Shown one piece after another: positions 313 to 57,493 of a DNA stretch of 64,000 nt. Below the pieces are notes generated by a model that ran no database searches, was not told the origin of the DNA, and worked only from the letters and a program-made list of their open reading frames with translations. Made by a program: the position numbers and the translations under genes. Location of the stretch: the NCBI RefSeq assembly GCF_006345805.1, contig NC_043006.1, positions 50,096,001-50,160,000 on the forward strand. The letters run 5' to 3'. This stretch comes from Octopus sinensis. Taxonomy: Eukaryota. Each line of letters starts with the position of its first letter. Positions within the stretch are counted from its first letter, which is position 1.

Positions 313-2528
313 GATTTATATATATATATACATTCTCTGTTTCATTTTATTACTAACTTTAGTTTGTTGAGTACTACTGAACACTATTTCAAATCATTAT
401 GCCAGTTTTTACTGACTTCACTAGTTTCACTTTCTGGATCATAAAATGAAACATCAACTGTTTTTACTTTTTGCATATTCTCTATGGCTGTATGCATCTC
501 TTATGGTCAGTTACAGTGCAAAGTGGAATGGGTGCATTTTTATCATGACAGCACTATTTTGCCGTGTCCTTGACAAGGTATAAAGCATCTTCTCCATCCT
601 ATGTTGTCTCCTTTTGTTCACAAGCATTTAAAAGCTAACTCTTTCCTGGTGGGTAGAAGAGAGTGGTAAAAAAGGACCAGACTGAGGAGGAGCAGAGTGA
701 GAGAAACAAGAGGGTGATAGGAACAAGAATAGAAGAAAAGAAAGTGCTAGCTACATGATTGTTGGTTGGGAGATTCAGTCAAGACAGTATGAGCAATATA
801 TGATGAAAGAAGAGTGCTTAGAGAGAGGTAGAGTAACAAGTTAGTATTGGATGTGAGCAAGTTAAGGGACAGAGAGTTTGTGGTTGTTACAATAATAGGT
901 AATGTAGGGAGTAATGTGAGGTTGACGAATAGCAATGAAGATAGGTGATAAGAGTGGGAGTGATGAAATGTGTTGGAGGAGAGAGTAATGATAGAGAGAA
1001 AGAAGTGAGTAATGAAGAACTTGTGATAGTAACGTGGGGAATTGAATACAAACAAGACAAATCCTTGTGATGCTAACTGTCATAACAGGCAACATGCAGA
1101 GAGAAAGAATAATTGCTGCAGGTAGGGGAATGTAATGAGTGGAGTGAGAATAATGGAAAAAATGAGATAGTAATTAAGAGAGTACATAGAGACATAAAAT
1201 GAACATGATGCTTAAGAGAAATCCAAATATAGATATACATCCCAATTTCCATTACCATCAATATTTTACATGTGTTTTTCTATGCTTGCATAGGTTGGGC
1301 AAATCATCTCCAGAACAGTGTTTTGCCACAAGTCATGTTCTTTGTCTTTTAACAAGGTTCAACTTCTTGAGATAAATCTTTACCACTTTATCGATTGTCT
1401 TCCTTGGCTTCACTCTTCCAGGGTCCTCTCACTTTGAATTCTCAGCACTTCTTTACACCACTAGCATCTGCCATTTGCATCACATTCTACCATTGCCTTC
1501 TTTCCTGCATACTGCATCAAATTCCTCTTATATCTAGTTTTTCTCTCAGTTTTTTTTTGCTCCTTCATTCATGCTCACTAACAAGTGGAGTATGCTTGCT
1601 TCATTCTTCTCTTTCCAGCCTTTGCAAATTCTCTGTGTTCAAGGTTCACATCTTGCTGCCATGCAATATTGCATTATCTGAGAAAGGAACTCTTTGTTGT
1701 TAGAAGTAATATCTCCTTGAATTTTTCCATGGCATTCTTACTGTGGCATTACTGTATCTTGGTTTCAGAATAGGTATTCCATATCCCTGTCATAAGAGGT
1801 GGCTAAAAGGGCTGGTGACTGGGAATTTGTCCAACCAATTCTTCCATGTAGCAGTAGACATAAAATCATAATTATTATGTTCCTATTGTAATAGCTGAAA
1901 GGGTTTTAGGTGGAGATATGGCTGCTATTTCTAGCAGGTTGAATGACTGTATAGATGTTCCCTCATTTGCTCATGCTCTAGCTGATGTCAGTTATATAAA
2001 TTTTTATAGGCTCAGATTTTCTTTTGATGTCTCCTATATCCATTTGTAACCCCAACTCAGTTCTAATTGAACAAATCCATAGCAAGTTGACAGATATATA
2101 AGTGCAAAACAGATCTCTTGATGGTATAAGTATGCCATGCATCTGCTTAGTTGTGATCCATACAGCACACTCAAACACTCGGTTAATCATATGGAATGCA
2201 GTGGTGGACGTGTTACAATCTTTACAGTTTTATTTGTGCATGTTTGTAGATTCTAGTGGAAGCAGTCAGTAACAGTTTAATTTCTTTTGAATTTATGATT
2301 GATGGTATATATTATCCATGCTAATAAGCTTGAAACTGCTGCAGGTATTATTATGTCTGTTCTGTTTATGTTTTTTTTTTTTTTGGACTAAGTAAGAGGG
2401 ATAATATTTTTAGGATACCATTGAATATGTGTCTTAGGGGAGGAATTGCAAAACATACAGCAAACAAAAAGAAAACCCTCTTCATCACTCTCCATCTCAA
2501 CTTTTATAATATCTTTATCTGTTTTCAG

Positions 2529-2599
2529 TCCAATGAAAGGATAGTAAACCGTATTCAGCATGTGAAAAAACTCATAAAAAGATTCAAGAAAGAAAGACG
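2529..2599 (+). CDS. TFPT: First visible coding exon of a TFPT/INO80F-like gene with an HMG box (SNERIVNRIQHVKKLIKRFKKER; upstream exon(s) not found)
   Basis: Acceptor ttatctgttttcag|TCC and donor CG|gtgagt (phase 2). The peptide matches the recalled human TFPT coiled coil [24 protein letters not shown]. Confidence 0.85.
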
Positions 2600-2915
2600 G
2601 TGAGTTTCTGTATATTTCTGGGAAGAGTGTATTATTATTGGTTGTGGTAATAATAATTTTGATTAGAGAATCTTTGTCTCTAGTTTGTATTTTATACAGA
2701 GCTATGTTTTAACTTCATATCTAAAGTAACTCATTAATTCATATCTGCTGTGCAGTGGGATTGAACCTGGAGCCATGCAGTTATGAAGTTTTACTTAACT
2801 ATACATCCATGACCAGTGCTTATTTCTTAATTACTTACTCTGTAGCTTTTCATTAAAGATTTCATCTCTTTCCAGTCTTTATTTAATTAATACTTTACAT
2901 TTATATATGTTTTAG

Positions 2916-2985
2916 GTTTTTATCCAATAAACTAGACGAACATGGTGATAACTACAGAGAGGCATCTGTTCCTGTTATGTGGGAG
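2916..2985 (+). CDS. TFPT: Exon 2 of the TFPT-like gene (R-FLSNKLDEHGDNYREASVPVMWE)
   Basis: Acceptor tatatgttttag|G completes the CG+G Arg codon; donor GAG|gtatgt. It continues the recalled TFPT motif RFLMRVLDSYGDDYR. The exon is too short for the ORF track and was found by hand. Confidence 0.88.
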
Positions 2986-4093
2986 GTATGTTTCTATGAT
3001 GTGGTTGTATTCATTCATTTTTTGTTCTGTAAAAGCAGGACTTGGTCTTCTAGCGCTTGTAACAACTGAATCAAAGCATAAAACTTCCACTTTCTTTCTA
3101 ATCTATTGAGTTGTGTAGCCCCTGGTCAGCCTTGATTGAGCAAGCCTCATCAAAAGCATTGAAACTGTGACCAACTTTTGCTATATTTAAACACAATGTA
3201 TGTGTATTTGAGTGTGCTTATGCTTGTCACCCTATCTTGACATTGCATATAAATGTTATTCATTTCCAATATACTGCAAAAAACATGTCTGGACATGGGA
3301 AAATATTACTTTGCTAGGAAACAGGTAAGGATTGGCAACAGGAAGGCTGTCAGAAATCTGCCTCAAATCTGTTGACCTAATGAGGCATGGAAAAGTGATT
3401 AAAACAATGATGATGATGATGATATGCTTGTACAGTTGTCTGTATTGTGTATATTTGTATTTATGAGTATACATGTGCAGGTGTGTGCATGTTTGTGTGT
3501 ATGAGTTTGTACAGTGTTCCCCTGTTGTTACCTTCTTTTCTTCAATATCTGCTGGTGTTCTATTTATTTTTTCCGCCTCTTTTTGATGGTTCTCCTAAAC
3601 CTCTGCTTTCCATCAAAACTTGTTCCCTCTCCACCCCTCTTCCGTTATTCCTCACTGTTGTAATAATTTTCTTCTCTCTCACTTATTCCACTTTATTTAT
3701 CCTAACAAACCAGTAAACACTTTGCACTTTCTGGTGAAGAATTCTCTCCAAAACATTAACCTTTTGTTCTTCTTCATGGCATAACATTTATTCCACTGTT
3801 TGGACAATTGGTGTGACCATTTACTGAAACAGACCATCATTAGTCTCCTAGGATTGTACTGTTTCATTATAGTGTAACTAAACTTTCATTATCTAATGGG
3901 CATTTCCATTTTGTTGTTGTTTTTTTTTTAATATAAAGTGGTTGGCATCAAGAAGGGCATCCAGTCATAGAAACATACCAAAGGAGATACTGGAATATGA
4001 CAGAGTACTCTGGCTTTTTAGATCTTGCTGAATTGCCCAACCCATGCTAGCATAGATGATAGACATTAAATAATGACAGTAATATATATATAT

Positions 4094-4480
4094 GTAGGTG
4101 TAGGAGTGGCTGTGTGGTAAGTAGCTTGCTTACGAACCACATGGTTCCGGGTTCAGTCCCACTGCGTGGCACCTTGGGCAAGTGTCTTCTACTATAGCCT
4201 CGGGCTGACCAAAGCCTTGTGAGTGGATTTGGTAGATGGAAGCTGAAAGAAGCCTGTCGTATATATGTAGATATATATGTATGTGTGTGTGTCGGTGTTT
4301 GTCCCTAACATCGCCTGACAACCGATGCTGGTGTGTTTACATCCCTGTAACTTAGCGGTTCGGCAAAAGAGACCAATAGAATAAGGACTATGCTTACAAA
4401 GAATAAGTCCTGAGGTCGATTTGCTTGACTAAAGGCAGTGCTCCAGCATGGCCACAGTCACATGACTGAAACAAGTAAAA

Positions 4481-4482
<2 letters not shown>
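4094..4482 (+). mobile_element. tRNA-derived SINE, family A (internal AT/GT microsatellite)
   Basis: Head ggagtggctgtgtggtaag...ggttcagtccc and end gactgaaacaagtaaaaga. More than 10 related copies occur in the window. Confidence 0.85.
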
Positions 4483-4519
<37 letters not shown>

Positions 4520-4549
4520 CTCCATACTTTGAAATGACTAAACATGAAC

Positions 4550-4880
4550 TACTGTTGGAACTTACATACCATGTACAGGAAACTTTTACCTCTTTCATAC
4601 ACCACTTTTCTTAAATAATGGAACTGCAACTACAATATCTTTATATATTTTATATTTTTATTTCTATTTTCATTCTCTTATTTCCTTCTATATTCCCTAT
4701 CTCCTCCTTTTCCATAATAATTCCTTATTTCAAACTCAAATATTAACCTCTATTTAACCATCTCACATTGTCTCTGATGAAGGGATATCCATAATATCCC
4801 AGAAACAGCTGTAAGACTATATTTTTTTTACTTATAAATGTCCTGAAAACTCCTCAAAACCTTGGCTTTGTTATCTCATT
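4550..4880 (+). mobile_element. Penelope-like terminal-repeat fragment carrying a hammerhead motif
   Basis: Contains gtct-CTGATGA-a-gggatat/atatccc-a-GAAA-cagctg-TA-agac. The element boundaries are approximate. Confidence 0.5.
4770..4817 (+). ncRNA. Minimal type-I hammerhead ribozyme motif
   Basis: CUGAUGA core, 7-bp stem II, GAAA, palindromic stem III (A-CAGCUG-U), UA cleavage site and 4-bp stem I. Confidence 0.6.
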
Positions 4881-4890
4881 TTGTCTGATA

Positions 4891-5350
4891 TCATCATCAT
4901 CATTCATTTAGCGTCCGTTTTCCATGCTAGCATGGGTTGGACGGTTCAACTGGGGTCTGGGGAGCCCGAAGGCTGCACCAGGCCAGTCAGATCTGGCAGT
5001 GTTTCTACAGCTGGATGCCCTTCCTAACGCCAACCACTCCGAGAGTGTAGTGGGTGATTTTATGTGCCACCGACACAGGTGCCAGACGAGGCTGGCGAAC
5101 GGCCACGCTCGGATGGTGTTTTTTATGTGCCACCGACACAGGTGCCAGACGAGGCTGGCAGACGGCCACGCTCGGATGGTGTTTTTATGTGCCACCGACA
5201 CAGGTGCCAGATGAGGCTGGCGAACGGCCACGATCGGATGGTGTTTGTTACGTGCCCGCAGCACGGAGGCCAGTCGATTCGGTACTGGCTACGGCCACGT
5301 TCGGATGGTTTTCTTGTGTGCCACCGGCACTGGTACCACAAAGAAACAAA
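4891..5350 (-). mobile_element. Retroposon with an RTE-like (ATG)n tail and an internal 62-63 bp tandem repeat
   Basis: The catcatcat tail lies at the left end. Repeat units start at 5061, 5124 and 5186, followed by degenerate units. Confidence 0.65.
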
Positions 5351-5637
5351 TTCCATTGATGTTCATCTATTTTGATTTGTTTTATGTATATATATATATA
5401 TATAATCAATAATAATAAGGGAGTTTCTTCTTATAGTAGAAGAAATAGCTAAGTTCTTTGGTTGCTATTTCTAAAGTTTGGTATGTGGCAAAGCAAATTT
5501 TGCTGAACCCTGATTATAATTATACTCATAATTATAAAAATATTGTTTATATATATATATCATCATCATCTTTCTGCACCTTTTTTTCCCCACTGTTGTT
5601 GTGGCATTGTTTCTCTTATCTTATTCCTCCATTACAG

Positions 5638-5922
5638 GAAGACCAGATATACCTCAATGCTAACCAAACAAAGGTAAAGAGTCCACCGGAATCATGTGAA
5701 GAAGAGCCTCCTTCCAGAGTTGCTAAAGGGTCGTTGGGTTTCAGTAGTCTACTAGAAACGACGGGCAAAGGTCCACTGCCCTCAGCACTTGCTAAAGTGC
5801 GTAAAATGAAGGCTGACAAGAAAGATGGTGTTGCTGACAGCAGCAAGAAGCACCCATCGAAAAATGCATTTCTGACATTCTATGAGCATCATAAAAATAT
5901 TGTTCAGGATGAGTATTTCCAG
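5638..5922 (+). CDS. TFPT: Exon 3 of the TFPT-like gene (95 aa linker plus HMG helix 1, ...KKHPSKNAFLTFYEHHKNIVQDEYFQ)
   Basis: Acceptor ttattcctccattacag|GAA and donor CAG|gtttgt, phase 0 at both ends, inside ORF 5458..6021. Basic patch followed by an NAF-x-x-F HMG-box start. Confidence 0.85.
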
Positions 5923-6329
5923 GTTTGTATATCTTTTTATAGTTTTGTTCTTTCTTTTCTCTCTTTCAGTCAAATAAGGAGATTTCTTAGGACTGGGAAA
6001 CTTTTCGGACTTACATCTTGAATTAACCTTTTAGCATTGAAACCAGCCATATCTAACCTAAATATTCTACCAATTTTATGTTCAAGCCAGCCAGATGCAA
6101 CCTCTCACTCCTACCCTACAATGTCCTAGAAATAAGCAATCACATCTTGAAAATCTCAAAGCTACAATATGATGAATGATTAATTCAAAACAATGAGAAT
6201 AAATAAGCATTACATTTGACAGAATAATCTGACTGTTATAAGCAATATTTGTTTTTTTATGACATCTCTGTTTTAATCACATCAAGCAAGGTAGCTGGGC
6301 ATTATCCCTTCCCTTTCAAGTGACACAGT

Positions 6330-6653
6330 TTGCTGAGACCTCCTTCAGTCATGACTGACTGTGGGATTGCACCTAGAAAGTTACCCTCCCAGGCACAAGT
6401 CCAGGCAAGGTTGTTTATGGAAGACCAGCAGTCGCCCATGCATACTGGCCTCCCCTCTCCACGCCACCAGTGTTATCCAAGAGTAAGGAAACAGCAGATA
6501 CAGCTTGGCACCTGTGACATCGCAACTCATTTCTGGAGCAACGTGAAATAAAGTGTCTTGCTCAAGAACACAACACGCAGCCTGTTCGGGATTCAAACAC
6601 CCAACCTCACGATCATAAGCTCGACGTTCTAACCACTGAGCCATGCGCCTTCA
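6330..6653 (-). mobile_element. tRNA-derived SINE with a Meta/V-SINE-like core
   Basis: The minus strand reads gaaggcgcatggctcagtggttaga...ttcttgagcaagacacttt. A 13-bp TSD-like repeat caagtga(c/t)acagt lies at 6317 and 6654. A second copy is at 59944-60278. Confidence 0.8.
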
Positions 6654-7671
6654 CAAGTGATACAGTAATGTATCTTAATACTGCAAATAAATAAAAGGTC
6701 TGTCAATTTTACATTTTGTGACTCAGAATTCCAAGAGTCTTGGTCTATCTTCATTCCTCATATCATATCTACAGCCTCCCTGTATATTAGAGTAGACATG
6801 CTGTTTTCTGCATCTGAAAGAAAGAGCTGATGCTATTGTTTGCTGATAGATGAGAGGCTTTCACAAATGGCCAGCCAGATATTCTTGCCTGACTGACCCA
6901 CTGGTGTTTTGCAGTACTACCAAGATATGTGTTAGTCCTGTATACACTTTTCAGATTTATCTTTACACTTGTGGCTCATAATTTTGATATGATTTACTGG
7001 CTGGATACTCTTCCTGTGGTTGGGTTTATTTGCTTTGTCCTGAATTCCAAGAAATGGACTGGGAATGAGGAAGTTCACTTGTAGGTTGTTGTAATTGAAA
7101 TAATGGTGGCTGGTGGAGTGGAGATGGCGGAATGATAACAAGCTCACTATTGACAGGATGCACTTGTCAAGCAAAGTTCCACCTGTATACCTTGGAAGGA
7201 AGAACAAGATATTAACCCTTTAGTGTTCAGATTATTCTATCAAACATAATGCTTATTGATACACATTGATTTGAATTAATCATGCATTATCTCATATCTC
7301 CAAGATGTTGATGGTGTAATTACTTAATGTAGAATAACATTGTAGGGTAGGTGTGAGAGCCTGGATCTGGTCAGTTGGAGTATAAAACAGATTAAATATT
7401 TTGGCCGGATATGGCCAGTTTAAATACTAAAGGGTTAAGATATGAGTGACACACACACAATTATATTTTGTAAGATGTTCTTTCTTTTTGTGATAAAATA
7501 GTTATTTAATATTTTAATAAGATTTGGTTGTAATTTATTATCAGTTGATCATGTAGAGGCTTTCTCTTTGACTCATGCAGTGAGGATAATAGTGCAAGTA
7601 GTGGTGGTCTATTAATTTAACTTCTGAATCCATTTAAGATATATTTGAGTTTCTTACAGTAAAAATAGGGT

Positions 7672-7990
7672 TTTATTATTATTGTTATTATGTTTGACTT
7701 TTGCATTGTATTTGTACAAGTTGACTCCAAGTCTCACTCAGGGACCTCAAGAGAAAACAGGTTTGAAGTTCAAGTTGGTGTTATGCCTGGGGTGTCATAT
7801 ATTTGGTTTTGCACATAGTATTGTTCTAGAGAATGTCTAAGAAAACAAGAAAATAATAAGTTTGTTTTAAAATTTGAGATTACATAGACAAAATTTCATG
7901 TAGGATATGAGCGGTTCCCGTGTGCACTATCTTTTGAATTTCTGTCCTTTTGGGGTTTCTTGGTATCTGAGCTAGGTAGGAATCAGCCCC
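7672..7990 (-). mobile_element. 5'-truncated R4/Dong-like (RLE) non-LTR retrotransposon 3' end, antisense in intron 3
   Basis: Encodes GADSYLAQIPRNPKRTEIQKIVHTGTAHILHEILSM*. Its 3' UTR matches that of the 50357-51100 copy, and it has an AAT tail. Confidence 0.8.
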
Positions 7991-7995
7991 ATTTA

Positions 7996-8335
7996 TTATT
8001 ACCTCCACCATAGCGAAGGTAGAGGTATTGCTTTCAATCGTTCTTGTTTGTTTGTCCATGGACAAGATAGCTCAAGAACTGCTGGATGGATTCAGATGAA
8101 ACTTTCAGGGTTGTTTGGTCTCATGACTAGCACAAACTGATTAGATTTTGGGATCAATCTGATAATGAACAAGGATTCTGGATTATTTTACCTGTTTTTT
8201 TAACTTTTGAGAGTGGTCATTTGTGAAAGCAGTCGAGTTTATTTCAGATATTCTCATTTTAAAAATCCTCTCTGGCTAATCGTTGAGAGGATGTTGGTGT
8301 TGCCTTTGCAGAGGCTTGCGCTCTCTGAGGGCTAT
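7996..8335 (+). mobile_element. Non-autonomous Helentron-like (HINE/DINE-type) element
   Basis: Starts ttattacctccacca, then a gttt microsatellite and atgaaacttt, and ends gcagaggcttgcgctctctgag. This is the recalled HINE terminal layout. Confidence 0.55.
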
Positions 8336-8357
8336 TATTATTATTATTATTATTATA

Positions 8358-8519
8358 GCGTAGGAGTGGCTGTGGGGTAAATGGCTTGCTTACGAACCAC
8401 ATGGTTCCGGGTTCAGTCCCACTGCATGGCACCTTAGGCAAGTGTCTTCTACTATAACTTCAGGCCGACCAAAGCTTTGTGAGTGGATTTGGTAGATGGA
8501 AACTGAAAGAAGTCCGTCG

Positions 8520-8556
<37 letters not shown>

Positions 8557-8765
8557 ATATGTTTGTGTGTCTGTTTTTGTCCCCCCCAACATGGCTTGAC
8601 AGCCGATGCTGGTGTGTTTACGTCACTGTAACTTAGCAGTTCGGCAAAAGAGACCAATAGAATAAGTACTAGGCTTACAAAAAATAAGTCCTCGGGTCGA
8701 TTTACTCGACTAAAAGGTGGTGCTCCAGCATAGCCTCAGTCAAATGACTGAAACAAGTAAAAGAG
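8358..8765 (+). mobile_element. SINE family A
   Basis: Full head, internal microsatellite and tail, with several CpG-to-TpG/CpA changes. Confidence 0.85.
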
Positions 8766-8933
8766 TATATGAGGATGACATTGTGAGAGCCAGAACAAAT
8801 GCTACAAGGCAAATCTAACACTCAAACTATTCTGCCAACAATAATGAGCAATAATAATAATCTTAATGATTTTTTTTTTTTTAAAGATCATATTCTGATT
8901 GAATTTAACCAAATTGCTTTTATATTCTTACAG

Positions 8934-9017
8934 AGAACTGGTGAAGAAATTCCACATCATGTACTAATTGCAAAAGTTACAGATAACTGGCATAATCTGA
9001 CGCCAGAGAAGAAACAG
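8934..9017 (+). CDS. TFPT: Exon 4 of the TFPT-like gene (HMG helix 2, RTGEEIPHHVLIAKVTDNWHNLTPEKKQ)
   Basis: Acceptor ttttatattcttacag|AGA and donor CAG|gtaaat; 84 nt, phase 0. W-x-x-L-x-x-E-x-K HMG signature. Confidence 0.85.
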
Positions 9018-10336
9018 GTAAATTTCTAATTTGATTTTATTTATATTTCTTGTACTAGATTATCTCATTGGTCTTGCAGCCATGTTGGGTCAATTCATTC
9101 CAGGGTGTTTAGTTGATTAAATATCAATCTTAATACTTTGGTACAATTTCAAGCTTCTCATAAAGGGACATAATTCAGATGGAACTAAATGTGCATTTTT
9201 TTTTTTTCACATCAATGTTGATATGTAAACACTCGAAAAGATTTTGCAGGTTCTCTCTGCCAAATTCCATCAACCAGTTTCTATAATTCTCTAGGAATTC
9301 GTTGACCAATATTATGAGTAGTTAACTTTTGCCGAAGACTGTGCACTTTGGAATCAAACCTGGAATCAATGATGCAAATTGAATGTCTTAAAACCGCACA
9401 GTTACACCAGCAACCGTTTATATTTTCAAATTATCTCCCCTGTGTTTTACTTGTTTCATCAATAAATTTTTAAAAACTACTAAGTATAATACTATTTGAC
9501 TAAAATACAATACAGTGGGTGTGTGAAGTACTCTATATTTTGTACGTGAAGTACTTTATTCATAGGTGATTTAGTATACGTTGTATGTATGAAATATTCT
9601 TTCATTTTACTCGTTTCAGTCATTGGACTCCAACCATGCCTGCAATATTTTTTAAAAACCTGATAGTAGTCTATCGTTCTCTTTTTACATAACTGTTGTG
9701 GTGAACAATTCTCAGTCACTGTGGGGGTGAACACAAAGATGCCAAGCCCCATATGTATGATGTGTGTGTGCATACACACACACTCCCACGTAGAACAGGG
9801 TTTCACGCTGTTTCTGTCAACTAGAGGCACTCACAAGGCATCTGTTGATTTTGAGCTGTAGTAGAAAATACTTGCTCAAGGTGTTGTGCAGTGGGACTGA
9901 ACCAGAAATTATGTGGTTGTAAAGTGATATTCTTACTGACAGCCTGTTGAGTGAATACATTTTTCAGTATGAGGTTTGTACTAAAGTTTGACTATAAAGT
10001 GTTGCGAATGCATTATGGTACTAGTTTCAAACGTTAGTATGTTGTTTCTGAACTGCAAGTAAAGCTATGACTGAGTAAAACTATGCTCAAAGGCATTCTC
10101 GTCTTTTTAGTGCTACCTAGGAATGGCTGTGATTTGAGAGATATTTAGCTGCTATTTCTAGCAGATTAAGCAACCATGTAGTGCTTTCCTTGTTGCCAGA
10201 GTGGCATAGTAGAAGCATTGGGCAGGTACATAACTTTGCATTTGTCTTACTAATGTTTTCACTCATGCTTTACTTTTACAAATATACTTCATGTGTGTGC
10301 ATGTTGATATCCTAAAACCAAAGAACCATGTAAGAA

Positions 10337-10648
10337 GCACTGGTGCCATGTTAAAGCACTGGTGCTGGTGTCACATAAGGGGCACTGGAGCTGGTCCCAC
10401 ATAAGGAGCACTGGTGCTGATGCCAGATAAGGAGCACTGGTGATGGTCCCACTTAAGGGCTTAAGAGGCACTGGTGCTGGTATCACATAAGGAGTGCTGG
10501 TATCACATAAGGAATACTGGTGCTGGTCCCACATAAGGAGCACTGGTGCTGGTCCCACATAAGGAGCACTAGTGCTGGTCCCACTTAAGGGCTTAAGGGG
10601 CACTGGTGCTGGTCCCACATAAGGAGCACTGGTGCTGGTATCACATGA
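10337..10648. repeat. 26-bp minisatellite (CACTGGTGCTGGTCCCACATAAGGAG), about 11 units, two with a cttaagggcttaag insert
   Basis: Direct head-to-tail units without unique spacers. Confidence 0.9.
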
Positions 10649-10979
10649 GCAAATATTTAGTACGAGCAAAACGCCCCCCCCCCCGTCCAATCGATGGTGC
10701 TGAGTTGTCAAACATTTAAGCCAAATTTTCTCAAAACAACTTGTCTGACCGTCCCATAGGCCTCCCTTTTGAGAAACACTGACTTAACCTAAATTTGAGA
10801 CACCAGCAAATGAAGAAATAAAGATAGACTTTTTTTCTATTCCAAAGAAAAACGATTTTATTCACACAAATATGCAACCGAAGAGTTTAAAGTGGAAGGT
10901 GCAGTTATGTACAGGTTGACGGAAGAAAAGCAGGACAAAAACGGCTTTATCGTTCGCATTCTCACCTGGAATCGATTTT

Positions 10980-11124
10980 CGTAATTTTTTCAAGACTTAT
11001 ACATGCCCTGATACCGTCGGTATCTACACATCAAATTTGAGCACAATCGGATGGAGGATGCCTGAGATCCTAGAAGACACACACACACACACACACACAC
11101 AGACAATGGATTTTATATAATAGA
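10980..11124 (-). mobile_element. Helitron-type 5' terminus fragment
   Basis: The minus strand begins A^TCTATTATATAAAATCC followed by a (tg)n tract, like the other Helitron 5' ends here. No 3' end was found. Confidence 0.45.
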
Positions 11125-11286
11125 TGAGACCTGGAATAACTGAAACGGTGATGAGGGTTAGAGAAAGATCCATACAGTTTTGAATTTTTGTATATATTGG
11201 TATTTCTCTTTTGTGAAAGTTTTGTGGTTCTTGGACTTTGTTTATTGAAATGACAATCTTTTATGCCTTTTATTAAAAAAAAACAG

Positions 11287-11460
11287 GTATACTACGACAT
11301 GTATGAAAGAGTGAAGGAACCAATACCAAACAGCAAGTATTCCAGTCAAGAAACGAATGAAGAATTGGTGCGTAAACAGTCTGAAGAAGCTGCTGTGGCA
11401 GCTGCGAATCTTTTGGCTGATGACAGCGACATAAATGTTAAACAGGAGATGGAAACATGA
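11287..11460 (+). CDS. TFPT: Terminal coding exon of the TFPT-like gene (VYYDMYERVKE...INVKQEMET*)
   Basis: Acceptor aaaaaaaaacag|GTA, phase 0. It completes HMG helix 3 (KQ|VYYDMYER), followed by an acidic tail and TGA at 11458-11460. Confidence 0.8.
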   Translation, partial: VYYDMYERVKEPIPNSKYSSQETNEELVRKQSEEAAVAAANLLADDSDINVKQEMET

Positions 11461-12117
11461 AAGGTGATGCTTGAGTGATTGCTTTGCATGTGACTGTAAA
11501 TGGGTGAGTGTGTGTGTGTGTGTGTGTGTGTGCATGGTTGGGGATTGTGTTGCAATTGAGGTGTACCCTCCACACACACACACACACATACACTCAAACA
11601 CAAATTCATAAAAAATAGTATGCATACATATATATATATATGTGTGTGTGTGTGTGTATATATATGTGTGTATATATATGTGTATATATATATATGCACA
11701 TACACATATTTTGCCTATTTATATATACATGACTGCATGCATATGTATGTAATTTTATATATTTATATATTCACACTAACATGAGCACTTATGTATACAT
11801 ACACACATGTATACATATATGTATACGTACATTGTGTATATATATTTAAGTATATAGTTATGTGTGTATATATATATATGTATACATATATATATGGAAA
11901 ACGGACGTTAAATGATAATGATGATATATATATATATATATATATAATAATAATAATATTAGGGAGTATAACTCCAAACTTACCGGGAAAAATTCAATCT
12001 AGTATTAAATCAAATTTCACAATATAAATATATAAAGTATAAATTAGAGATAATTCCACTATTATGCAATTCAAACAATGATAGACATAAACCAAATCAT
12101 AAATAAAAAATAAAATA

Positions 12118-30949: not shown

Positions 30950-32228
30950 CGAGGGGCGTTCAATAAGTAATGCCCCTGACCCACTTCCCATAGCAGTAGA
31001 GCAACGAAACTTGGCACAGTTATTAGTCTTTTTCTACATAGCAACCACCCAGAGTTACTCATTTCTCTCATTGTTTGATGCAGCTCTGGAGACCGTTTTT
31101 TGTAGAAGACCCTAGCTTGGTCCTCCAACCTGAACGTGACTTCAGAAATCAAGGCTGCATCATCTGGGAAACGCTTTCCTTTCAAAAACAACTTCATGAC
31201 TGGGAAGAGGTGAAAATCAGAGGGTGCAAGGTCAGGAAAGTAGGGGGATGGGGGAGGAGTTCATAGCCATACGCCTGTGCTTCTGATCTGGCGACAAGCG
31301 AGTTGTGGACCGGAGCGTTGTCCTGCAGGAGGAGGATGCTTTGCTGATCTTGCCCCACCTCTTGATTTTGATAGCTTCTCTTAATTTCCTCAAAAGTGAA
31401 GCATAATAGGCTCCTGTAATTGTGGTACCCTTTGCCAGGAAATCTGTCATCACTACTCCGTCCTGGTCCCAGAAGACTGTGAGCATGACCTTGCCAGCGG
31501 AGGGCTGTACCCTTGCCTTCTTTGGAGGGGGTGAGCCACGGTGCTTCCACTGCATTGACTGGGCTTTGGTCTCTGGATCATCGTGATGGACCCAGGTTTC
31601 ATCCTGTGTAATCAGTCTTTTGAAAAATTTTGACTCATCTTCTTGGCACATCTCCAAATTCACCCTCGAGCACTCGACGCGTTCTTGCTTCTGGAAAGGT
31701 GTGAGCAACCTGGGAATCCATCTGGCAGACACCTTTTGCATATGCAAATGGTCATGAATGATAGTTTCCACAGACCCGGTACTAATCTTGACCTCATGGG
31801 CTATTTGGCGAATAATTATGCGTCGATATTCCAAAATGGCAGCCTCAACTTGACGGACAGATGCCTCATCAATGGCAGAAGGGGGGCGACCAGATCTGGG
31901 AGCTGTTTCCACAGAGTTCCGACCATGTTTGAATTCACGATGCCAGCGTTTTACAAGGTCATATGATGGGGCATCATCACCATAAGTTACTTTCATTTCA
32001 TCAAAAGTCTCCCGTGGTGTGCGTCCTTTCAAATACAAAAACCGGATCACTGCTCGACACTCAACAGGCTCCATTTCACACTTGACTCGGTTCAAACACC
32101 TGTAAATCAGAAACCACAATTAATTCAGAGCTGTTATTTGCCACTTACTCTATAGAGATATAAATGATTGCACATGCAAAATTTCAACTGCAAGTGGGTC
32201 AGAGGCATTACTTATTGAACGTCCCTCG
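30950..32228 (-). mobile_element. Full-length mariner (DD34D) transposon with a frameshifted transposase
   Basis: About 37-bp TIRs CGAGGG(G/A)CGTTCAATAAGTAATGCC(C/T)CTGACCCACTT with TA on both sides. The ORF from 32074 reads MEPVECRAVIRFLYLKG...WIPRLL...QDETWVHH...QDNAPVH...HPP, split over three frames. Confidence 0.95.
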
Positions 32229-39840: not shown

Positions 39841-40799
39841 TCTCTCTCTATATAAACGGCAGTTTGTCTGTCTGTGTGGCTGTGTGTCTGTCAGGTTGTA
39901 CCCTCACCCTAACCACGGCTCTCAACCGATTCTGATGAAACTTGACACACACATAGCCCAATGTCATAATTCAAAACTAACGCAGCGAAAATTTTGAAAA
40001 GTTCCCCCAGTTCTGAAAAAAATCGATAGATTCGACATGGGGTCGAGAATCAGAAACACAAACCACAGACTGTCTAGGGGACGCAACTCGACCTTTTTAA
40101 CTCTCAACTCCATCAATATCCAGCTACTTGAAGCTATTCCTGGTGATGTCCACGTCTACAAATCTATTGATAGGACAGCAGACCCCACCGAGCTTGCCGA
40201 TTATCCTGTTGAATTCCTGAATTCACTTGAACCGCCAGGCCTGCCGCCACACATCCTGAAGTTAAAAGTCGGTGCGCCCATTATGCTCATCAGGAATTTG
40301 GTTCCACCTAAACGGTACAACGGCACACGTCTGGTTGTGAAACATTTGCCACCACGTTTAATAACGGCCACAATACTTACCGATTGTGGGAAGGGAGAGG
40401 ACGTCTTCATTCATGCATGCACCTTCAACCGTCGGGCGCTGACCTACCAATCCACTTCAGGCGTTCTCAGTTTCCTGTTAAACTCTGCTTCGCAATGTTC
40501 ATCAATAAATCCCAAGACCAAACGCTACAAGTCGCTGGGTTACAGTTGGGCGACAAGTGCTTCGCCCACGGTCAACTCTACGTGGGCTGTTTCACGCGTT
40601 GGGAGGCGCAATGATGTTTTCATGTTTTCGCCCAAAGGGACAGCTAGGAACATCGTATACACAGAAGTATTCGAGTGAAGAGAAGACATTGCAACCTAAC
40701 ATGCGCCTTTCCTCCCTAGAGGGAAAGGACTAGATTGGGATTAGTCGTTGCCAACTAGGGGCTCTCACATACCCGGGCAACGCCGAACTATGCTGCTAG
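39841..40799 (+). mobile_element. Non-autonomous Helitron (959 bp) retaining a PIF1-like helicase C-terminus
   Basis: A^TC...cccgggcaacgccg...CTAG^T termini. 40090-40675 encodes YPVEFLNSLEPPGLPPHILKLKVGAPIMLIRNL...NGTRL...FAMFINKSQDQTL...HGQLYVG, with frameshifts. Confidence 0.9.
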
Positions 40800-49280: not shown

Positions 49281-50255
49281 AGAGTAGCCGAAATCTGCTG
49301 CAAAGAAAATAAAATTAAATGCAAAGACAAAAGCACATGAAAAATTAGCTAGCAGATGGAAACAGAAACCTCCGCATGGCAAGTATGCGGCTCGTAGCAA
49401 ACAAGCTGACGTCGACCAAACACACATGCATCAATGGTTACGAAGCTCAGGGCTAAAAGCAGACAGCGAAGATTTCATATTAGCTGCTCAAGACCAAAGC
49501 TTATTAACCCGGAACTACCAAGCCAATGTGATAAAAAATGAAGCTGACCCAAAATGCCGATTCTGTAACGATGAGATTGAAACTATAGACCACCTAATCT
49601 CACTTGTAGAATCTTAGCACCTGTAGAATATAAAGCAAGACATGACAGAGTTGGCCAGTATTTACATTGGACAATATGTCGGCATTATAAAATCATCTTG
49701 AAGCTGTGATTGAGGGAGAAAATGTGTCGATTCTATGGGACTTCCCCGTACATACCGACAAAACTATAAAAGATAATAAACCGGATATTATTATAAAAGA
49801 TCAGTCAAAAAAGGTGTGTTTATTAATTGCCATGAATATTCCTTGCGATCACAATATAGCAGCGACAGAATTTGACAAGATCAGTAAATACAAAGACTTG
49901 CTAATAGAAATTGAAAAAATGTGGCTTCTCAAGGCGACTACAGTACCAGTGATTGTAGGATCTCTAGGAATGATAAAAAAAGGTACTGAAACCTATTTGA
50001 AAATGATATTAGGCTTACCATCCCTACAGGAAATGCAAAAAATCGTGTCAACTGGAACGACTCATGTACTGAGAAGAGCATTATTGCTGTGAAAACAACA
50101 TCTATTCATGAATTTATTTATTAATTAATTTTTTTAAATACATATTTTATCTGTGAATTTGTGTGTGTAATCTGGGATTGCATACAATGAGCTTCTCTGC
50201 TCTAGGTGTACGGAAAGCACTCGGCGAGAAACGGAAGAAAATTTGAAGAAGGAAA
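49281..50255 (+). mobile_element. R4/Dong-like RLE retrotransposon 3' end (train member 2)
   Basis: WKQKPPHGKY...ILAAQDQSLLTRNY...CRFCNDEIETIDHLIS...KPDIIIKD...DKISKYKDL...VIVGSLG...TGTTHVLRRAL. Confidence 0.88.
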
Positions 50256-50359: not shown

Positions 50360-51100
50360 AATAAAATGAAACCATTGATCATGTTGTCTCCAAGTGCAGT
50401 CTTCTTGCACCTACAGAGTATCTCAACAGGCATGATGGAGCTGCACAATATATTCACTGGGTAATTTTTAAAAGCCTGGACTTGTCCCATGATTAGAACT
50501 GGTGGGAACACAAACCACCTTCAGTGCTTGAAAATGACCACACCTCACTTCTCTGGAACTTCACCATTCAAACTGACGGAAAGATAGATGCGAATAGGCC
50601 AGACATCATATTGAAAGACTTCAGACAAAAATCATGCTTCCTCATTGATATGACTGTCCCAATCGATATAAGCGTATCTGTCAAGACCTACCAAAAACTG
50701 AGCAAATATAAAGATCTTGAAATAGAAATTAGCAAAATGTGGAACCTGAAGACTAAAACAATACCTGTTGTCATAGGTGCCCTGGGAATGATAGTAAAAG
50801 GGGCTGATTGCTACCTAGCTCAGATACCAGGAAACCCCAAAATGGCAGAAATTCAAAAGATAGTGCTCATGGGAACTGCTCATATCCTACGCAAAATACT
50901 TTCTATGTAATCTCAAGTTTTAAAACAAACACAATTTTCTTATGGTTTCTTAAACATTCTCTAGAACAACACTATGTACAAAACCAAATATATGGTATCC
51001 TAAGCATAACACCAACATGAATTTCTAGCTTGTTGTCTCTTGAGGCCTCTGGGTGAGACTTGGAGCCAACTTGTACAAATGTAAAGCAAAAGTCAAACAT
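50357..51100 (+). mobile_element. R4/Dong-like RLE retrotransposon 3' end (train member 3)
   Basis: ETIDHVVSKC...RHD...LLWNFTIQTDGKIDANRPDIILKD...KLSKYKDLEIEI...GTAHILRKILSM*, with (AAT)n on both sides. Confidence 0.9.
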
Positions 51101-56003: not shown

Positions 56004-57493
56004 CGAGAGTAAGTCAAAAACTATCCACACTTTCACCATAACATATCTTTATTATTATCACACTGCCTTCTACGCGTGTGTTTACTACTGGTATTGTTGT
56101 AGTCTTATTTTCGAAGTTTGAGCCAGATCGCGCCATTTTTCTTTATGTCTTTACAGTGTAAGCATGACCGCTCCACTAGCAATATGCACGAAAGAAGAAC
56201 AAAGAGAAGTAATCCGATTTCTCTGGTACGAAGGTGTATCAGGTGCTGAAATTTATCGGAGGCTTTCAGTTCCATTGGTTAATGGTTTCAATAGTCTAGG
56301 TGGCCGTGTGTGGGCGTGCATTGTCACGCAACAACAAAACTTTCTTCGACAATAGGCTTCGCCATTTGGTGCGAATTGCTGTTTTCAGTTTGTTGGCCAG
56401 CAAAGCACTGTATCTTGCACTGTTGATCGTGAACCACTTTTCCAGTATAGGCCTTTTTGAGTCCCCCAAAAAGGTTAGCATCACTTTTTCCCGCGGAAGA
56501 CTGAGTCTTGAATTTCTTCGTCGCTGACGAGCTAGGATGTTTCCACTCCATGCTCTGCTTTTTGGATTCTGCCTCACAATAATGGACCCACATTGATTCT
56601 CCTATGATTATTCTGTTCAAAAATTCCTCTCCCTCATTGTTGTAGCGATCGAGTAGATGTTGGCGAACCTCAAGACGTTCGCGCTTGTGCTCTGCAGTAA
56701 GCTCTCTTGGCACCCATCTTGCACGGTCTTTATGGAAGCCGAGTTCATTGTGGATGATTTGATAGGCAGAACCTAAGGCGACGAGCTGGCAGAAACGTTA
56801 GCACGCCGGGTGACGCGCTTAGTAGTATTTCGTCTGCCGTTACTTTCTGAGTTCAAATTCCGCCGAGGTCGACTTTGCCTTTCATCCTTTCGGGGTCGGT
56901 AAATTAAGTACCAGTTACGCACTGGGGTCAACGTAATCGACTTAATCCCTTTGTCTGTCCTTGTTTGTCCCATCTATGTTTAGCCCCTTGTGGGCAATAA
57001 AGAAATAAGAACCATGACTAATCTGAAGAGAACGAGTTACCTCATCGATGATAATTCGCCGGTTCACCAATGCCATCTCTCGAGTTTGCTGAATCTTCTC
57101 GTCAGTGGTGGAAATTGATGGGTGTCCTTCTCCTGCTTCGTGCGTCACGTTTGTCCGGCCACTTTTAAACTCCTCGATCCACTCATATACACTTCTACGC
57201 GGTAGTGCACTGTCCCTATATTGTGCTAAAAGCCTCCGATGAATTTCAGTACCCGACACACCTTCCGACCAGAGAATTCGTAGCACTGCACTTTGTTCTT
57301 CTTTGATGCACATTGCTAGTGGAGTGGTGATGCTTACACTGTAAAGTCATAAAGAAAAACAGTGCGACCAGGCTCAAACTTCGATCACGTGACCACAATA
57401 GTACCAACTATATTTACGCATGCGCAGAAGGCTATGTGACAATAATATAGATATGTTATGACGAAAGTGCGGATAGTTTTTGACTTCTCCTCA
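56004..57493 (-). mobile_element. Rearranged mariner: degenerate transposase lacking its 3' end, capped by an inverted 5' end
   Basis: TIRs ...AAGTCAAAAACTATCC(A/G)CACTTTC...ATAACATATCT with TA flanks. The minus strand encodes CIKEEQSAVLRILWSEG...WVPRELT...LRDNARPHTA; the + strand at 56164 encodes a second N-terminus, MTAPLAICTKEEQREVIRFLW. Confidence 0.85.
56774..57007 (+). mobile_element. Deu/Nin-domain SINE inserted into the mariner ORF
   Basis: TSD AGAACC at 56768-56773 and 57008-57013. Removing the SINE restores QISHGSAYQIIHNELGF. Confidence 0.9.

What the first reader, a model, noticed from the sequence alone, without database searches (positions are those of the whole stretch)
2529..11460. 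Animal TFPT/INO80F orthologue with a C-terminal HMG box: the yeast Nhp10 architecture in a metazoan
Seen in sequence: five phase-compatible GT-AG exons splice into one open 227-aa frame. It runs from a coiled coil (NERIVNRIQHVKKLIKRFKKERRFLSNKLDEHGDNY) through a Pro/Ser/Lys linker to an HMG box (KHPSKNAFLTFYEHHKNIV...VTDNWHNLTPEKKQVYYDMYER) and an acidic tail. Recalled knowledge: the coiled coil matches human TFPT, an INO80 N-module subunit with no HMG box. Yeast Nhp10, also in the INO80 N-module, has a similar N-terminal coiled coil followed by an HMG box (KRPTNAY...WKNL...KPYYKLY) that binds distorted or linker DNA. Inference: TFPT and Nhp10 are orthologues, this lineage keeps the ancestral DNA-binding form, and vertebrates lost the HMG box. 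The HMG box is split across three exons, so it is invisible in the ORF track.
Basis: partly seen in the sequence, partly recalled or inferred. Interest (0 to 1): 0.85.

Follow-up and report, generated by a model that had tools for sequence, protein, structure and literature searches.

The report
Octopus INO80F/Nhp10 gene: coiled coil plus HMG box
This is the octopus copy of a small subunit of the INO80 chromatin remodeller, and its layout (a dimerising helix plus a DNA-binding HMG box), shared by most invertebrates and early fungi, indicates that human TFPT and yeast Nhp10 are the same ancestral gene and that vertebrates let the HMG box decay.

Summary
Five GT-AG exons (2529-2599, 2916-2985, 5638-5922, 8934-9017, 11287-11460) splice into 227 aa. 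These are residues 35-261 of the RefSeq protein LOC115216485 of Octopus sinensis (261 aa). Exon 1 lies about 1.2 kb upstream of the window.

- **Domains.** The protein has an INO80F/TFPT coiled coil (Pfam PF24245, above threshold), a disordered linker, an HMG box split over three exons, and an acidic tail.
- **Distribution.** The same architecture occurs in molluscs, a brachiopod, a bryozoan, a priapulid, arthropods, echinoderms, a hemichordate, amphioxus, a tunicate and early-diverging fungi. Shark and mammalian TFPT lack the box, but the shark keeps a detectable relic of it.
- **Link to yeast.** The N-terminus of yeast Nhp10 matches the fungal coil profile at 28 bits (0 of 5000 shuffles reach this). 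Its HMG box falls in one clade with all INO80F-linked boxes.

There are three caveats:
- The octopus box is the most eroded among the molluscs. It falls below Pfam's threshold, has lost the PKKP strand, and has a shortened helix 3.
- The architecture is not special to this lineage.
- Databases already record the architecture.

I found no paper that states the orthology. Interest is moderate.

The parts
2529..2599 (+). Exon 2 (residues 35-58 of the 261-aa protein): the middle of the INO80F coiled coil (SNERIVNRIQHVKKLIKRFKKER).
   Evidence: AG acceptor at 2527-2528 and GT donor at 2600-2601. Lies in Pfam PF24245, residues 21-64 of P0001. The AF2 helix 2-66 has pLDDT above 90.
2916..2985 (+). 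Exon 3 (residues 58-81): the end of the coil and the conserved post-coil motif LDEHGDNYREASVPVMWEE.
   Evidence: AG at 2914-2915 and GT at 2986-2987. The motif is nearly invariant across 35 lophotrochozoan orthologues. It is recognisable in shark and mammalian-type TFPT (LDSHGDGYR...ILLED).
5638..5922 (+). Exon 4 (residues 82-176): a disordered Pro/Ser/acidic linker, a basic patch (KVRKMKADKKD), and the first third of the HMG box.
   Evidence: cag|GAAGAC acceptor and CAG|gtttgt donor. pLDDT is below 50 for residues 94-154.
5845..5922 (+). HMG box part 1 (residues 151-176): a degenerate N-terminal strand (KKHPSK in place of PKKPAN, a 2-residue deletion) and helix 1 (NAFLTFYEHHKNIVQDEYFQ).
   Evidence: Alignments A1. 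AF2 helix 155-178 has pLDDT about 94. The diagnostic Asn before helix 1 is present.
8934..9017 (+). Exon 5 (residues 177-204): HMG box part 2, the loop and helix 2 (RTGEEIPHHVLIAKVTDNWHNLTPEKKQ). It is 84 nt with phase 0 at both ends.
   Evidence: tacag|AGAACT acceptor and CAG|gtaaat donor. AF2 helix 184-197. The invariant Trp195 is present. Bivalve models P0038 and P0040 lack exactly this segment.
11287..11460 (+). Exon 6 (residues 205-261 plus the TGA stop): a shortened HMG helix 3 (VYYDMYERVKE, broken by Pro216, nt 11287-11319), an acidic tail, and the C-terminal VKQEMET.
   Evidence: aacag|GTATAC acceptor and the stop at 11458-11460. AF2 helix 200-214. The YY.MY signature of INO80F-linked boxes is present.

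Best explanation
Window 2529-11460 holds exons 2-6 of the single octopus orthologue of the INO80 N-module subunit. This subunit is called INO80F/TFPT in mammals and Nhp10/Nht1 in yeasts.

**Shown:**
- The protein is a long N-terminal helix (the INO80F domain) plus a conserved LDEHGDNYR...MWEED motif, about 70 disordered residues, a three-helix HMG box and an acidic tail.
- This coil-linker-HMG layout is shared by most invertebrate phyla sampled and by early-diverging fungi.
- The boxes attached to INO80F coils form one clade that includes Nhp10.

**Inferred mechanism:**
- The helix pairs with the related INO80E/Iec3-type helix. In S. pombe, Nht1 and Iec3 depend on each other for incorporation. 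The pair docks on the N-terminal region of the Ino80 ATPase.
- The flexible linker lets the HMG box reach DNA outside the nucleosome and bind it without sequence specificity. It would thereby contribute to the linker-DNA sensing described for the yeast Nhp10 module.

**Inferred history:**
- Coil plus HMG was present in the opisthokont ancestor.
- Vertebrates lost the box by decay in place after splitting from tunicates.
- Cephalopods have separately eroded the long arm of the box (the PKKP strand and the C-terminal half of helix 3), so DNA binding by the octopus protein may be weakened.
For: - **Gene model:**
- **Domains:** Pfam INO80F at 50.3 bits and HMG_box at E 1.7e-4 on P0001. HMG scores 64.1 bits against a profile built without cephalopods, with 0 of 2997 shuffles reaching it. 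In the AF2 model, helix 2-66 and three helices at 155-214 have pLDDT 92-98, and the Foldseek top hits are BBX, CIC, SOX9, SOX30 and BAF57 HMG boxes at probability 0.93-0.99.
- **Distribution:** the INO80F profile found 241 cluster representatives among 1.84 billion, and more than 50 of the 150 listed have a downstream HMG box. Named examples with both Pfam domains are molluscs and Lingula; Saccoglossus, Branchiostoma 'TFPT', Anneissia and Diadema; Lepeophtheirus, a mite, Cloeon and Basidiobolus; Priapulus, Watersipora, Nymphon and Styela; and Paraglomus and Coemansia.
- **Nhp10 link:** the sequence was verified as NHP10_YEAST. Pfam INO80F scores 21.4 bits, E 2.6e-4, at residues 7-45, and it is the only non-HMG hit. 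Basidiobolus aligns with Nhp10 in one collinear HSP, E 3e-23. The fungal coil HMM scores 28.4 bits, with 0 of 5000 shuffles reaching it, and hhalign of the fungal against the mollusc coil gives probability 97%, E 6e-11. The HMG clade has support 0.80. Diagnostic residues are Asn (24/24 against 1/34 in other boxes), Thr (22/24 against 1/34) and the second Tyr (23/24 against 0/34).
- **Vertebrate decay:** the shark relic scores 8.7 bits with 0 of 2768 shuffles reaching it, and its alignments to amphioxus and mollusc orthologues run collinearly through the box.
- **Partner and DNA-sensing roles:** PMC7896557 and bioRxiv 10.1101/2025.11.21.689789.
Against: - The octopus box is below Pfam's gathering score (22.4-22.8 against 25.4). 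It lacks the basic PKKP strand, the diagnostic Thr and half of helix 3.
- The family's boxes are near net-neutral, so DNA affinity is uncertain.
- S. cerevisiae Nhp10 itself is below the INO80F cut-off. It scores only 10.6 bits against a profile dominated by metazoan sequences, and hhalign against the narrow mollusc profile gives probability 3.6%. The link therefore rests on fungal intermediates.
- Coiled coils can resemble each other by periodicity, and shuffling does not fully control for that.
- Neither complex membership nor DNA binding was tested for any invertebrate protein.
- I could not name any non-bilaterian animal or other holozoan sequences, and I could not obtain S. pombe Nht1.
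- No octopus RNA data were examined.
Confidence: 0.85

Rival explanations
1. Convergent fusion. An INO80F-type coil acquired an HMG box independently in animals and in fungi. On this reading TFPT and Nhp10 share a coil family, or only a coil-like periodicity, but are not orthologues, and vertebrate TFPT never had a box.
For: HMG boxes are promiscuous modules. S. cerevisiae Nhp10 is below the Pfam INO80F cut-off and weak against metazoan-only profiles. SH-like support for the joint HMG clade is only 0.80.
Against: Domain order and linker layout are the same in both kingdoms. INO80F-linked boxes share residues that are almost absent from 34 other boxes. The shark TFPT relic sits at the orthologous position. 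Tunicate and amphioxus orthologues carry the box.
Confidence: 0.07
2. The octopus HMG-like domain is a decaying or repurposed remnant that no longer binds DNA. On this reading the protein acts only as a structural or protein-binding subunit, as vertebrate TFPT presumably does, and cephalopods are partway along an erosion parallel to the vertebrate one. Orthology is not in dispute here.
For: All three cephalopod sequences lack PKKP (a 2-residue deletion) and have helix 3 cut short by proline. The octopus box is below Pfam's cut-off, whereas other molluscs pass. It sits on the longest branch in the HMG tree. The diagnostic Thr is lost.
Against: The hydrophobic core (F159, F162, W195, Y206/207/210) and three confident helices are kept. 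The box is conserved among cephalopods that are only about 60% identical overall, which implies selection. A basic patch precedes the box.
Confidence: 0.3
3. Gene-model artefact. The coil exons and the HMG exons belong to two neighbouring genes that were joined by prediction.
For: The octopus RefSeq model is a prediction. No octopus transcript was examined. The introns are long (2.6-3 kb) and full of repeats.
Against: Short contigs from two sequencing runs of a cephalopod relative encode coil and box in one uninterrupted ORF. The same architecture occurs in dozens of species. All junctions are in phase, and exons 2-6 contain no internal start or stop that would fit two genes.
Confidence: 0.02

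Closest known systems
Human TFPT / INO80F (Amida), a subunit of the INO80 N-module; Pfam PF24245
   Same: The N-terminal INO80F coiled coil and the following L-D-x-x-G-D-x-Y-R...L/W-E-D/E motif are shared. A [VILFM]-K-x-[ED] motif near the C-terminus is present in both.
   Different: Mammalian TFPT has no HMG box, and Pfam finds only INO80F. It also has a longer N-terminal extension. The octopus protein keeps a three-helix HMG box.
S. cerevisiae Nhp10 (and S. pombe Nht1), the HMG subunit of the fungal INO80 Nhp10 module
   Same: The order is the same: N-terminal coil, linker, one HMG box, acidic tail. The HMG box shares the clade-specific Asn and YY..Y residues.
   Different: Nhp10's coil is highly diverged (INO80F 21.4 bits, below the cut-off). 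It lacks the metazoan post-coil motif and the 4-5-residue insertion between helices 1 and 2. Its box keeps the canonical PKRP strand and a full helix 3, both of which octopus has lost. Nht1 itself could not be fetched.
Invertebrate and early-fungal INO80F-HMG proteins (for example Branchiostoma 'TFPT', Haliotis and Styela 'non-histone protein 10-like', Mytilus 'NHP10', Basidiobolus 'non-histone protein')
   Same: These are direct orthologues with the same two Pfam domains in the same order.
   Different: Their HMG boxes are canonical (50-74 bits). The octopus box scores 22-23 bits and has the cephalopod-specific deletions.
HMGB1/2 and Nhp6A, the abundant architectural HMG-box proteins
   Same: They share the HMG-box fold. 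The family profile matches HMGB1 box B at E 1e-10 to 4e-17.
   Different: They have no INO80F coil and belong to a different HMG clade. They have Ser instead of Asn before helix 1 and no YY. They are not dedicated remodeller subunits.

Membership tests
INO80F / TFPT (Pfam PF24245) | N-terminal INO80F coiled-coil domain scoring above Pfam's gathering threshold | tested here: met
   33.9 bits on the window-encoded part and 50.3 bits on full-length P0001, against a cut-off of 25.1.
INO80F / TFPT (Pfam PF24245) | Post-coil motif L-D-x-x-G-D-x-Y-R ... E-E/D-D shared with vertebrate TFPT | tested here: met
   Nearly invariant in alignment A1. It aligns with shark TFPT in BLASTP and hhalign.
INO80F / TFPT (Pfam PF24245) | Physical membership of the INO80 complex, pairing with INO80E | not testable with these tools
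   No structure of TFPT or Nhp10 exists in the PDB copy. No complex prediction was available.
HMG box (Pfam PF00505) | Profile match at or above the gathering score | tested here: not met
   22.4-22.8 bits against a cut-off of 25.4, although E is 1.3e-4 to 1.7e-4. The precomputed Pfam annotation omits PF00505 for the octopus protein but lists it for the other cephalopods and molluscs.
HMG box (Pfam PF00505) | Homology to canonical boxes through orthologues | tested here: met
   64.1 bits against an INO80F-type HMG profile built without cephalopods, with 0 of 2997 shuffles reaching it. The family profile A1 hits HMGB1 at 3.8e-17.
HMG box (Pfam PF00505) | Three-helix L-shaped fold | tested here: met
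   AF2 helices at 155-178, 184-197 and 200-214 have pLDDT about 94. Eight of the ten best Foldseek PDB matches at probability 0.8 or higher are HMG boxes, with target TM-scores of 0.58-0.71. The E-values are weak (0.17-0.6) because the box is a small part of a 261-residue query.
HMG box (Pfam PF00505) | Basic N-terminal strand (P-K/R-K/R-P) and a full-length helix 3 forming the long arm | tested here: not met
   The octopus has KKHPSK with a 2-residue deletion, and helix 3 ends at Pro216. All three cephalopods share this.
HMG box (Pfam PF00505) | DNA binding or bending | not testable with these tools
   This needs a gel-shift or bending assay.
Nhp10 / Nht1 (fungal INO80 HMG subunit) | Architecture of coil, linker, single HMG box and acidic tail | tested here: met
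   hhalign of A1 against Nhp10 gives one collinear alignment over both domains at probability 98%. Pfam gives the same layout for both.
Nhp10 / Nht1 (fungal INO80 HMG subunit) | Coil homologous to the Nhp10 N-terminal coil | tested here: met
   The link is transitive. The fungal coil HMM scores Nhp10 at 28.4 bits (0 of 5000 shuffles reach it) and octopus at 31.4 bits, and hhalign of the fungal against the mollusc coil gives probability 97%. The direct mollusc-to-Nhp10 comparison is weak.
Nhp10 / Nht1 (fungal INO80 HMG subunit) | HMG box in the INO80F-linked clade with its diagnostic residues (Asn before helix 1, L-T in helix 2, Y-Y-x-x-Y in helix 3) | tested here: met
   The clade is monophyletic with support 0.80. 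The octopus has Asn and YY..Y but has lost the Thr.

The most novel reading that the evidence does not exclude
The yeast Nhp10/Nht1 subunit and the metazoan TFPT/INO80F subunit are one orthologous gene. Reviews list them as species-specific parts of a 'very divergent' INO80 N-module. On this reading the opisthokont ancestor had the coil-HMG form, most animals still have it, and vertebrates (after the tunicate split) let the box decay in place, leaving a relic in sharks. Vertebrate INO80 would then have lost, or handed to another subunit, the Nhp10-type HMG contact with extranucleosomal DNA. Cephalopods may be repeating that erosion independently.
Probability: 0.8. Interest if true: 0.55.

Novelty: new member of a known kind. 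Interest (0 to 1): 0.45.

Why it matters
The INO80 N-module is still described as evolutionarily very divergent and poorly understood (bioRxiv 10.1101/2025.08.25.671740; PMC9733932). Reviews list Amida/TFPT and Nhp10 without equating them (PMC7171469). Neither protein has a solved structure.

Treating them as one subunit would have three uses:
- Yeast Nhp10 genetics and biochemistry could be applied to animal INO80.
- It predicts that INO80F pairs with INO80E as Nht1 pairs with Iec3.
- It raises a concrete question: what replaced HMG-mediated linker-DNA contact in vertebrates?

The gene itself is an ordinary, already annotated housekeeping gene, and the domain architecture is already visible in Pfam and UniProt. 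The value lies in a comparative inference, not in a new kind of element.

Tried and rejected
- **Exon 1 in the window:** not found. It was located upstream through the chromosome record.
- **Word-index search restricted to the coil:** it reached only molluscs. The exhaustive profile search was needed.
- **PDB sequence searches** with the coil profile, Nhp10 and a mammalian-type TFPT: these returned only unrelated coiled coils, generic HMG boxes or nothing, so no structural template exists for the module.
- **Direct comparison of the narrow mollusc coil profile with the Nhp10 N-terminus:** inconclusive (hhalign probability 3.6%, P 0.012; HMM 7.7-10.6 bits with 1-8 of 2000 shuffles reaching it). 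I replaced it with the fungal bridge.
- **First scan for HMG relics in HMG-less proteins with the mollusc box HMM:** nothing significant for the shark. A broader metazoan HMM that included the basic lead-in gave the 8.7-bit relic. The first run of that script failed on an option conflict and its numbers are void.
- **Other HMG-less proteins:** mammalian-type TFPT, P0066 and the millipede protein show no relic.
- **Apparently HMG-less bivalve proteins (P0038, P0040):** these are models that skip or truncate the box, not real losses.
- **P0180 (nematode):** it is annotated INO80E, so I did not count it as an INO80F without a box.
- **Seven literature searches:** no paper states the TFPT-Nhp10/Nht1 orthology. 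Subscription journals and orthology databases were not searchable.

Full report
**1. What is in the window.**

Reading 2300-6100 and 8700-11700 and splicing by script confirms five exons on the + strand with canonical AG/GT boundaries: 2529-2599, 2916-2985, 5638-5922, 8934-9017 and 11287-11460. They give one open frame of 227 aa ending in TGA.

The first exon starts at an acceptor, so the start codon must lie elsewhere. A search of the protein collection returned a 261-aa RefSeq protein, 'uncharacterized protein LOC115216485 [Octopus sinensis]', that is 100% identical over all 227 residues and has 34 more at the N-terminus. Those 34 residues are not encoded in the window.

The chromosome record (CM016868.1, GCA_006345805.1) matches the window with 0 mismatches over 14,460 bp. 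It places exon 1 (ATG...CAG|GTAAGA) 1,160-1,261 bp upstream of window base 1. The gene has six coding exons over 12.7 kb, and the window holds exons 2-6.

**2. Is the splicing real?**

I had no octopus RNA. A 60-65% identical cephalopod protein (P0002) is encoded as an uninterrupted 780-nt ORF on contigs of 1,150 and 1,636 nt from two independent sequencing runs. For a gene spread over 12.7 kb in octopus, that can only be spliced message joining the coil to the HMG box. The same joined architecture recurs in dozens of species (see section 4). I rate a chimeric gene model at about 2%.

**3. Domains.**

Pfam results:
- INO80F (PF24245) scores 33.9 bits on the window part and 50.3 bits on the full protein, against a cut-off of 25.1.
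- HMG_box (PF00505) scores 22.4-22.8 bits, E 1.3-1.7e-4, just under the cut-off of 25.4.

That shortfall reflects cephalopod divergence, not the absence of a box:
- In the 35-sequence alignment A1, the octopus segment aligns column for column with canonical boxes (DPNAPKKPANAFLMFC...W...YYDMYEKEKERYE) of gastropods, bivalves and Lingula.
- The profile of that alignment hits HMGB1 at 3.8e-17.
- An HMG profile built from 19 non-cephalopod orthologues scores octopus residues 135-225 at 64.1 bits. None of 2,997 shuffles exceeds 14.7 bits.

AlphaFold2 with A1 gives:
- a single long helix at residues 2-66 (pLDDT 85-98);
- disorder at 94-154;
- three helices at 155-178, 184-197 and 200-214 (pLDDT 92-95).

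Foldseek against the PDB returns HMG boxes as the top matches: BBX, CIC, SOX9, SOX30 and BAF57, with probability 0.84-0.99 and target TM-scores of 0.58-0.71. The E-values are weak because the box is a quarter of the query.

The box is split over three exons: 5845-5922, 8934-9017 and 11287-11319.

**4. Distribution of the architecture.**

A profile of the coil alone (A2) was searched against 1.84 billion cluster representatives. It found 241 proteins at E ≤ 1e-3. Of the 150 listed, more than 50 carry an HMG box downstream of the coil. Most of the rest are short fragments.

Named examples that carry both Pfam domains:

| Group | Examples |
|---|---|
| Molluscs and brachiopod | many molluscs, Lingula |
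| Other protostomes | Watersipora (bryozoan), Priapulus, Nymphon, a mite, Lepeophtheirus, Cloeon |
| Deuterostome invertebrates | Anneissia, Diadema, Saccoglossus, Branchiostoma (named 'TFPT'), the tunicate Styela (named 'non-histone protein 10-like'; INO80F 25.3 bits, HMG 50.8 bits) |
| Fungi | Basidiobolus (INO80F 63.1 bits, HMG 68.9 bits), Paraglomus (65.7, 73.6), Coemansia (31.7, 67.8) |

Automated pipelines have already named members 'TCF3 fusion partner-like', 'NHP10' and 'non-histone protein 10-like'. Shark TFPT (Mustelus, P0078) and a mammalian-type TFPT (P0093) have INO80F only. I recognise P0093 from memory; no tool named it.

**5. The link to Nhp10.**

The evidence that connects it to the family is:
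- Pfam finds its HMG box (49.4 bits). The only other hit is INO80F at residues 7-45, at 21.4 bits and E 2.6e-4. That is below the cut-off but in the expected place.
- BLASTP of the Basidiobolus protein against Nhp10 gives one collinear HSP from coil to box (27-184 against 4-167, E 3e-23).
- An HMM of the first 80 residues of 14 early-diverging fungal proteins scores Nhp10 residues 5-47 at 28.4 bits, with 0 of 5,000 shuffles reaching it (maximum 17.1).
- The same fungal HMM scores octopus at 31.4, scallop at 30.1, amphioxus at 34.6 and mammalian-type TFPT at 25.5 bits.
- hhalign of the fungal coils against the mollusc coils gives probability 97%, E 6e-11.

Direct comparison of a mollusc-only profile with Nhp10 is weak, so the connection is transitive.

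There is independent support from the box. In a tree of 58 HMG boxes, the 24 attached to INO80F coils (animals, fungi and Nhp10) form one clade with SH-like support 0.80. They share residues almost absent from the other 34 boxes:

| Residue | INO80F-linked boxes | Other boxes |
|---|---|---|
| Asn before helix 1 | 24/24 | 1/34 |
| Thr of 'LT' in helix 2 | 22/24 | 1/34 |
| Second Tyr of 'YY' in helix 3 | 23/24 | 0/34 |

. A concatenated coil-plus-box tree separates a fungal clade containing Nhp10 from an animal clade with deuterostome, lophotrochozoan and arthropod groupings, as vertical descent predicts.

**6. Vertebrate loss.**

Amphioxus and the tunicate keep the box, while shark and mammal do not. 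Several results point to a relic in the shark:
- BLASTP of amphioxus against shark, and hhalign of the mollusc profile against shark, both run collinearly from the coil through the linker into shark residues 181-239 (KDEREPQPAGKRHSSPFYILAHDQ...LGQVWDPGSPEEKAGY).
- That region scores 8.7 bits against the metazoan box profile, with 0 of 2,768 shuffles reaching it (maximum 7.9).
- Mammalian-type TFPT shows nothing.

This is modest evidence that the box decayed in place in the vertebrate stem. Some non-vertebrate HMG-less entries are models lacking the middle box exon (Tegillarca P0038, Mytilus P0040). A millipede protein (P0068) may be a real secondary loss.

**7. What is particular to octopus.**

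Compared with other molluscs, the three cephalopod sequences differ in two ways:
- PKKPAN is replaced by HPSK or IPRQ, with a 2-residue deletion.
- Helix 3 ends early at a proline (ERVKEPIP against EREKERYEREM).

These are the two elements that pack together as the long arm of the L-shaped fold. The octopus also lost the diagnostic Thr and sits on the longest branch of the box tree. The hydrophobic core (F159, F162, W195, Y206, Y207, Y210) is intact.

The octopus therefore keeps the ancestral architecture, but it is not a good example of the ancestral DNA-binding form. I give 0.3 to the reading that its box no longer binds DNA effectively.

**8. Mechanism.**

Shown: the domain anatomy and the homology above.

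From the literature:
- The Nhp10 module associates with extranucleosomal DNA and is proposed to sense linker length (bioRxiv 10.1101/2025.11.21.689789).
- In S. pombe, deleting nht1 or iec3 removes Nht1, Iec3 and Iec5 together from INO80 (PMC7896557).
- C. thermophilum 'HMG' and 'Iec3' were co-expressed as N-module parts (PMC9733932).

The Pfam INO80E and INO80F coil families cross-hit: the Basidiobolus and Paraglomus proteins score 30-36 bits on INO80E.

Inferred: the octopus helix forms a heterodimeric coil with an INO80E-type partner on the Ino80 N-terminus. The disordered linker tethers the box so that it can contact linker DNA.

**9. Novelty.**

The gene is annotated, although as 'uncharacterized', and the two-domain architecture is already in Pfam and UniProt. 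Seven full-text searches found no paper equating TFPT with Nhp10/Nht1. Reviews and a 2026 preprint still treat these subunits as lineage-specific and the N-module as very divergent. I could not check orthology databases or subscription journals.

The result is a sound and useful comparative inference about a known family. It is not a new kind of element, and it is not specific to this window.

Noticed in passing
P0078 (Mustelus asterias TFPT), residues 181-239: Shark TFPT has no Pfam HMG hit, but it retains a decayed HMG-box relic at the orthologous position: 8.7 bits, with 0 of 2768 shuffles reaching it, and collinear with the amphioxus and mollusc boxes. Mammalian-type TFPT shows none.
   Followed up: partly
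window 8934-9017 (exon 5); P0038, P0040, P0058: The middle HMG exon is 84 nt with phase 0 at both ends, so skipping it would keep the frame and break the box. Bivalve models P0038 (Tegillarca) and P0040 (Mytilus) and the unnamed P0058 lack exactly this segment. They could be annotation errors or a conserved HMG-less isoform.
   Followed up: partly
window 11437-11457 (VKQEMET) and the C-termini of orthologues: A [VILFM]-K-x-[ED] motif (SUMO-consensus-like) sits near the C-terminus in octopus, Aplysia, Lingula, a crinoid, Styela and mammalian-type TFPT (IKVEED). It is absent in many others.
   Followed up: partly
window 31232-32119 (-) and 56324-57313 (-): Mariner/Mos1-type transposase remnants. 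The first carries HTH_48 plus Transposase_1 (87 bits). The second is split into two ORFs with a weak HTH_48 hit.
   Followed up: partly
window 40037-40678 (+): A 213-aa ORF with a Pif1 helicase 2B domain (53 bits). It is probably a Helitron-type or Pif1-like helicase fragment.
   Followed up: partly
window 49706-50092 (+) and 50524-50910 (+): Two 128-aa ORFs that resemble each other (…DIIIKD…CLLIAMNIP… and …DIILKD…CFLIDMTVP…) and have no Pfam hit. They are probably two copies of a retroelement ORF tail.
   Followed up: no
window 5058-5338 and 10355-10646 (introns 3 and 5): Intronic tandem arrays: a 63-bp unit repeated 4.4 times and a 26-bp unit repeated 10.8 times. The second creates a spurious 140-aa ORF on the minus strand.
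   Followed up: no
window about 4100-4480 and about 8700-8765: A repeated interspersed element. It has a tRNA-like head (…ggttccgggttcagtcccactgcgtggcacc…) and a shared tail (…ctccagcatggccacagtcacatgactgaaacaagtaaaag…), which suggests a SINE. ARAGORN calls no tRNA in the window.
   Followed up: no
P0068 (Chamberlinius hualienensis, millipede) and P0036 (unnamed, 157 aa): These are full-length-looking INO80F proteins with no HMG box or relic, from outside the vertebrates. They may be independent losses.
   Followed up: partly
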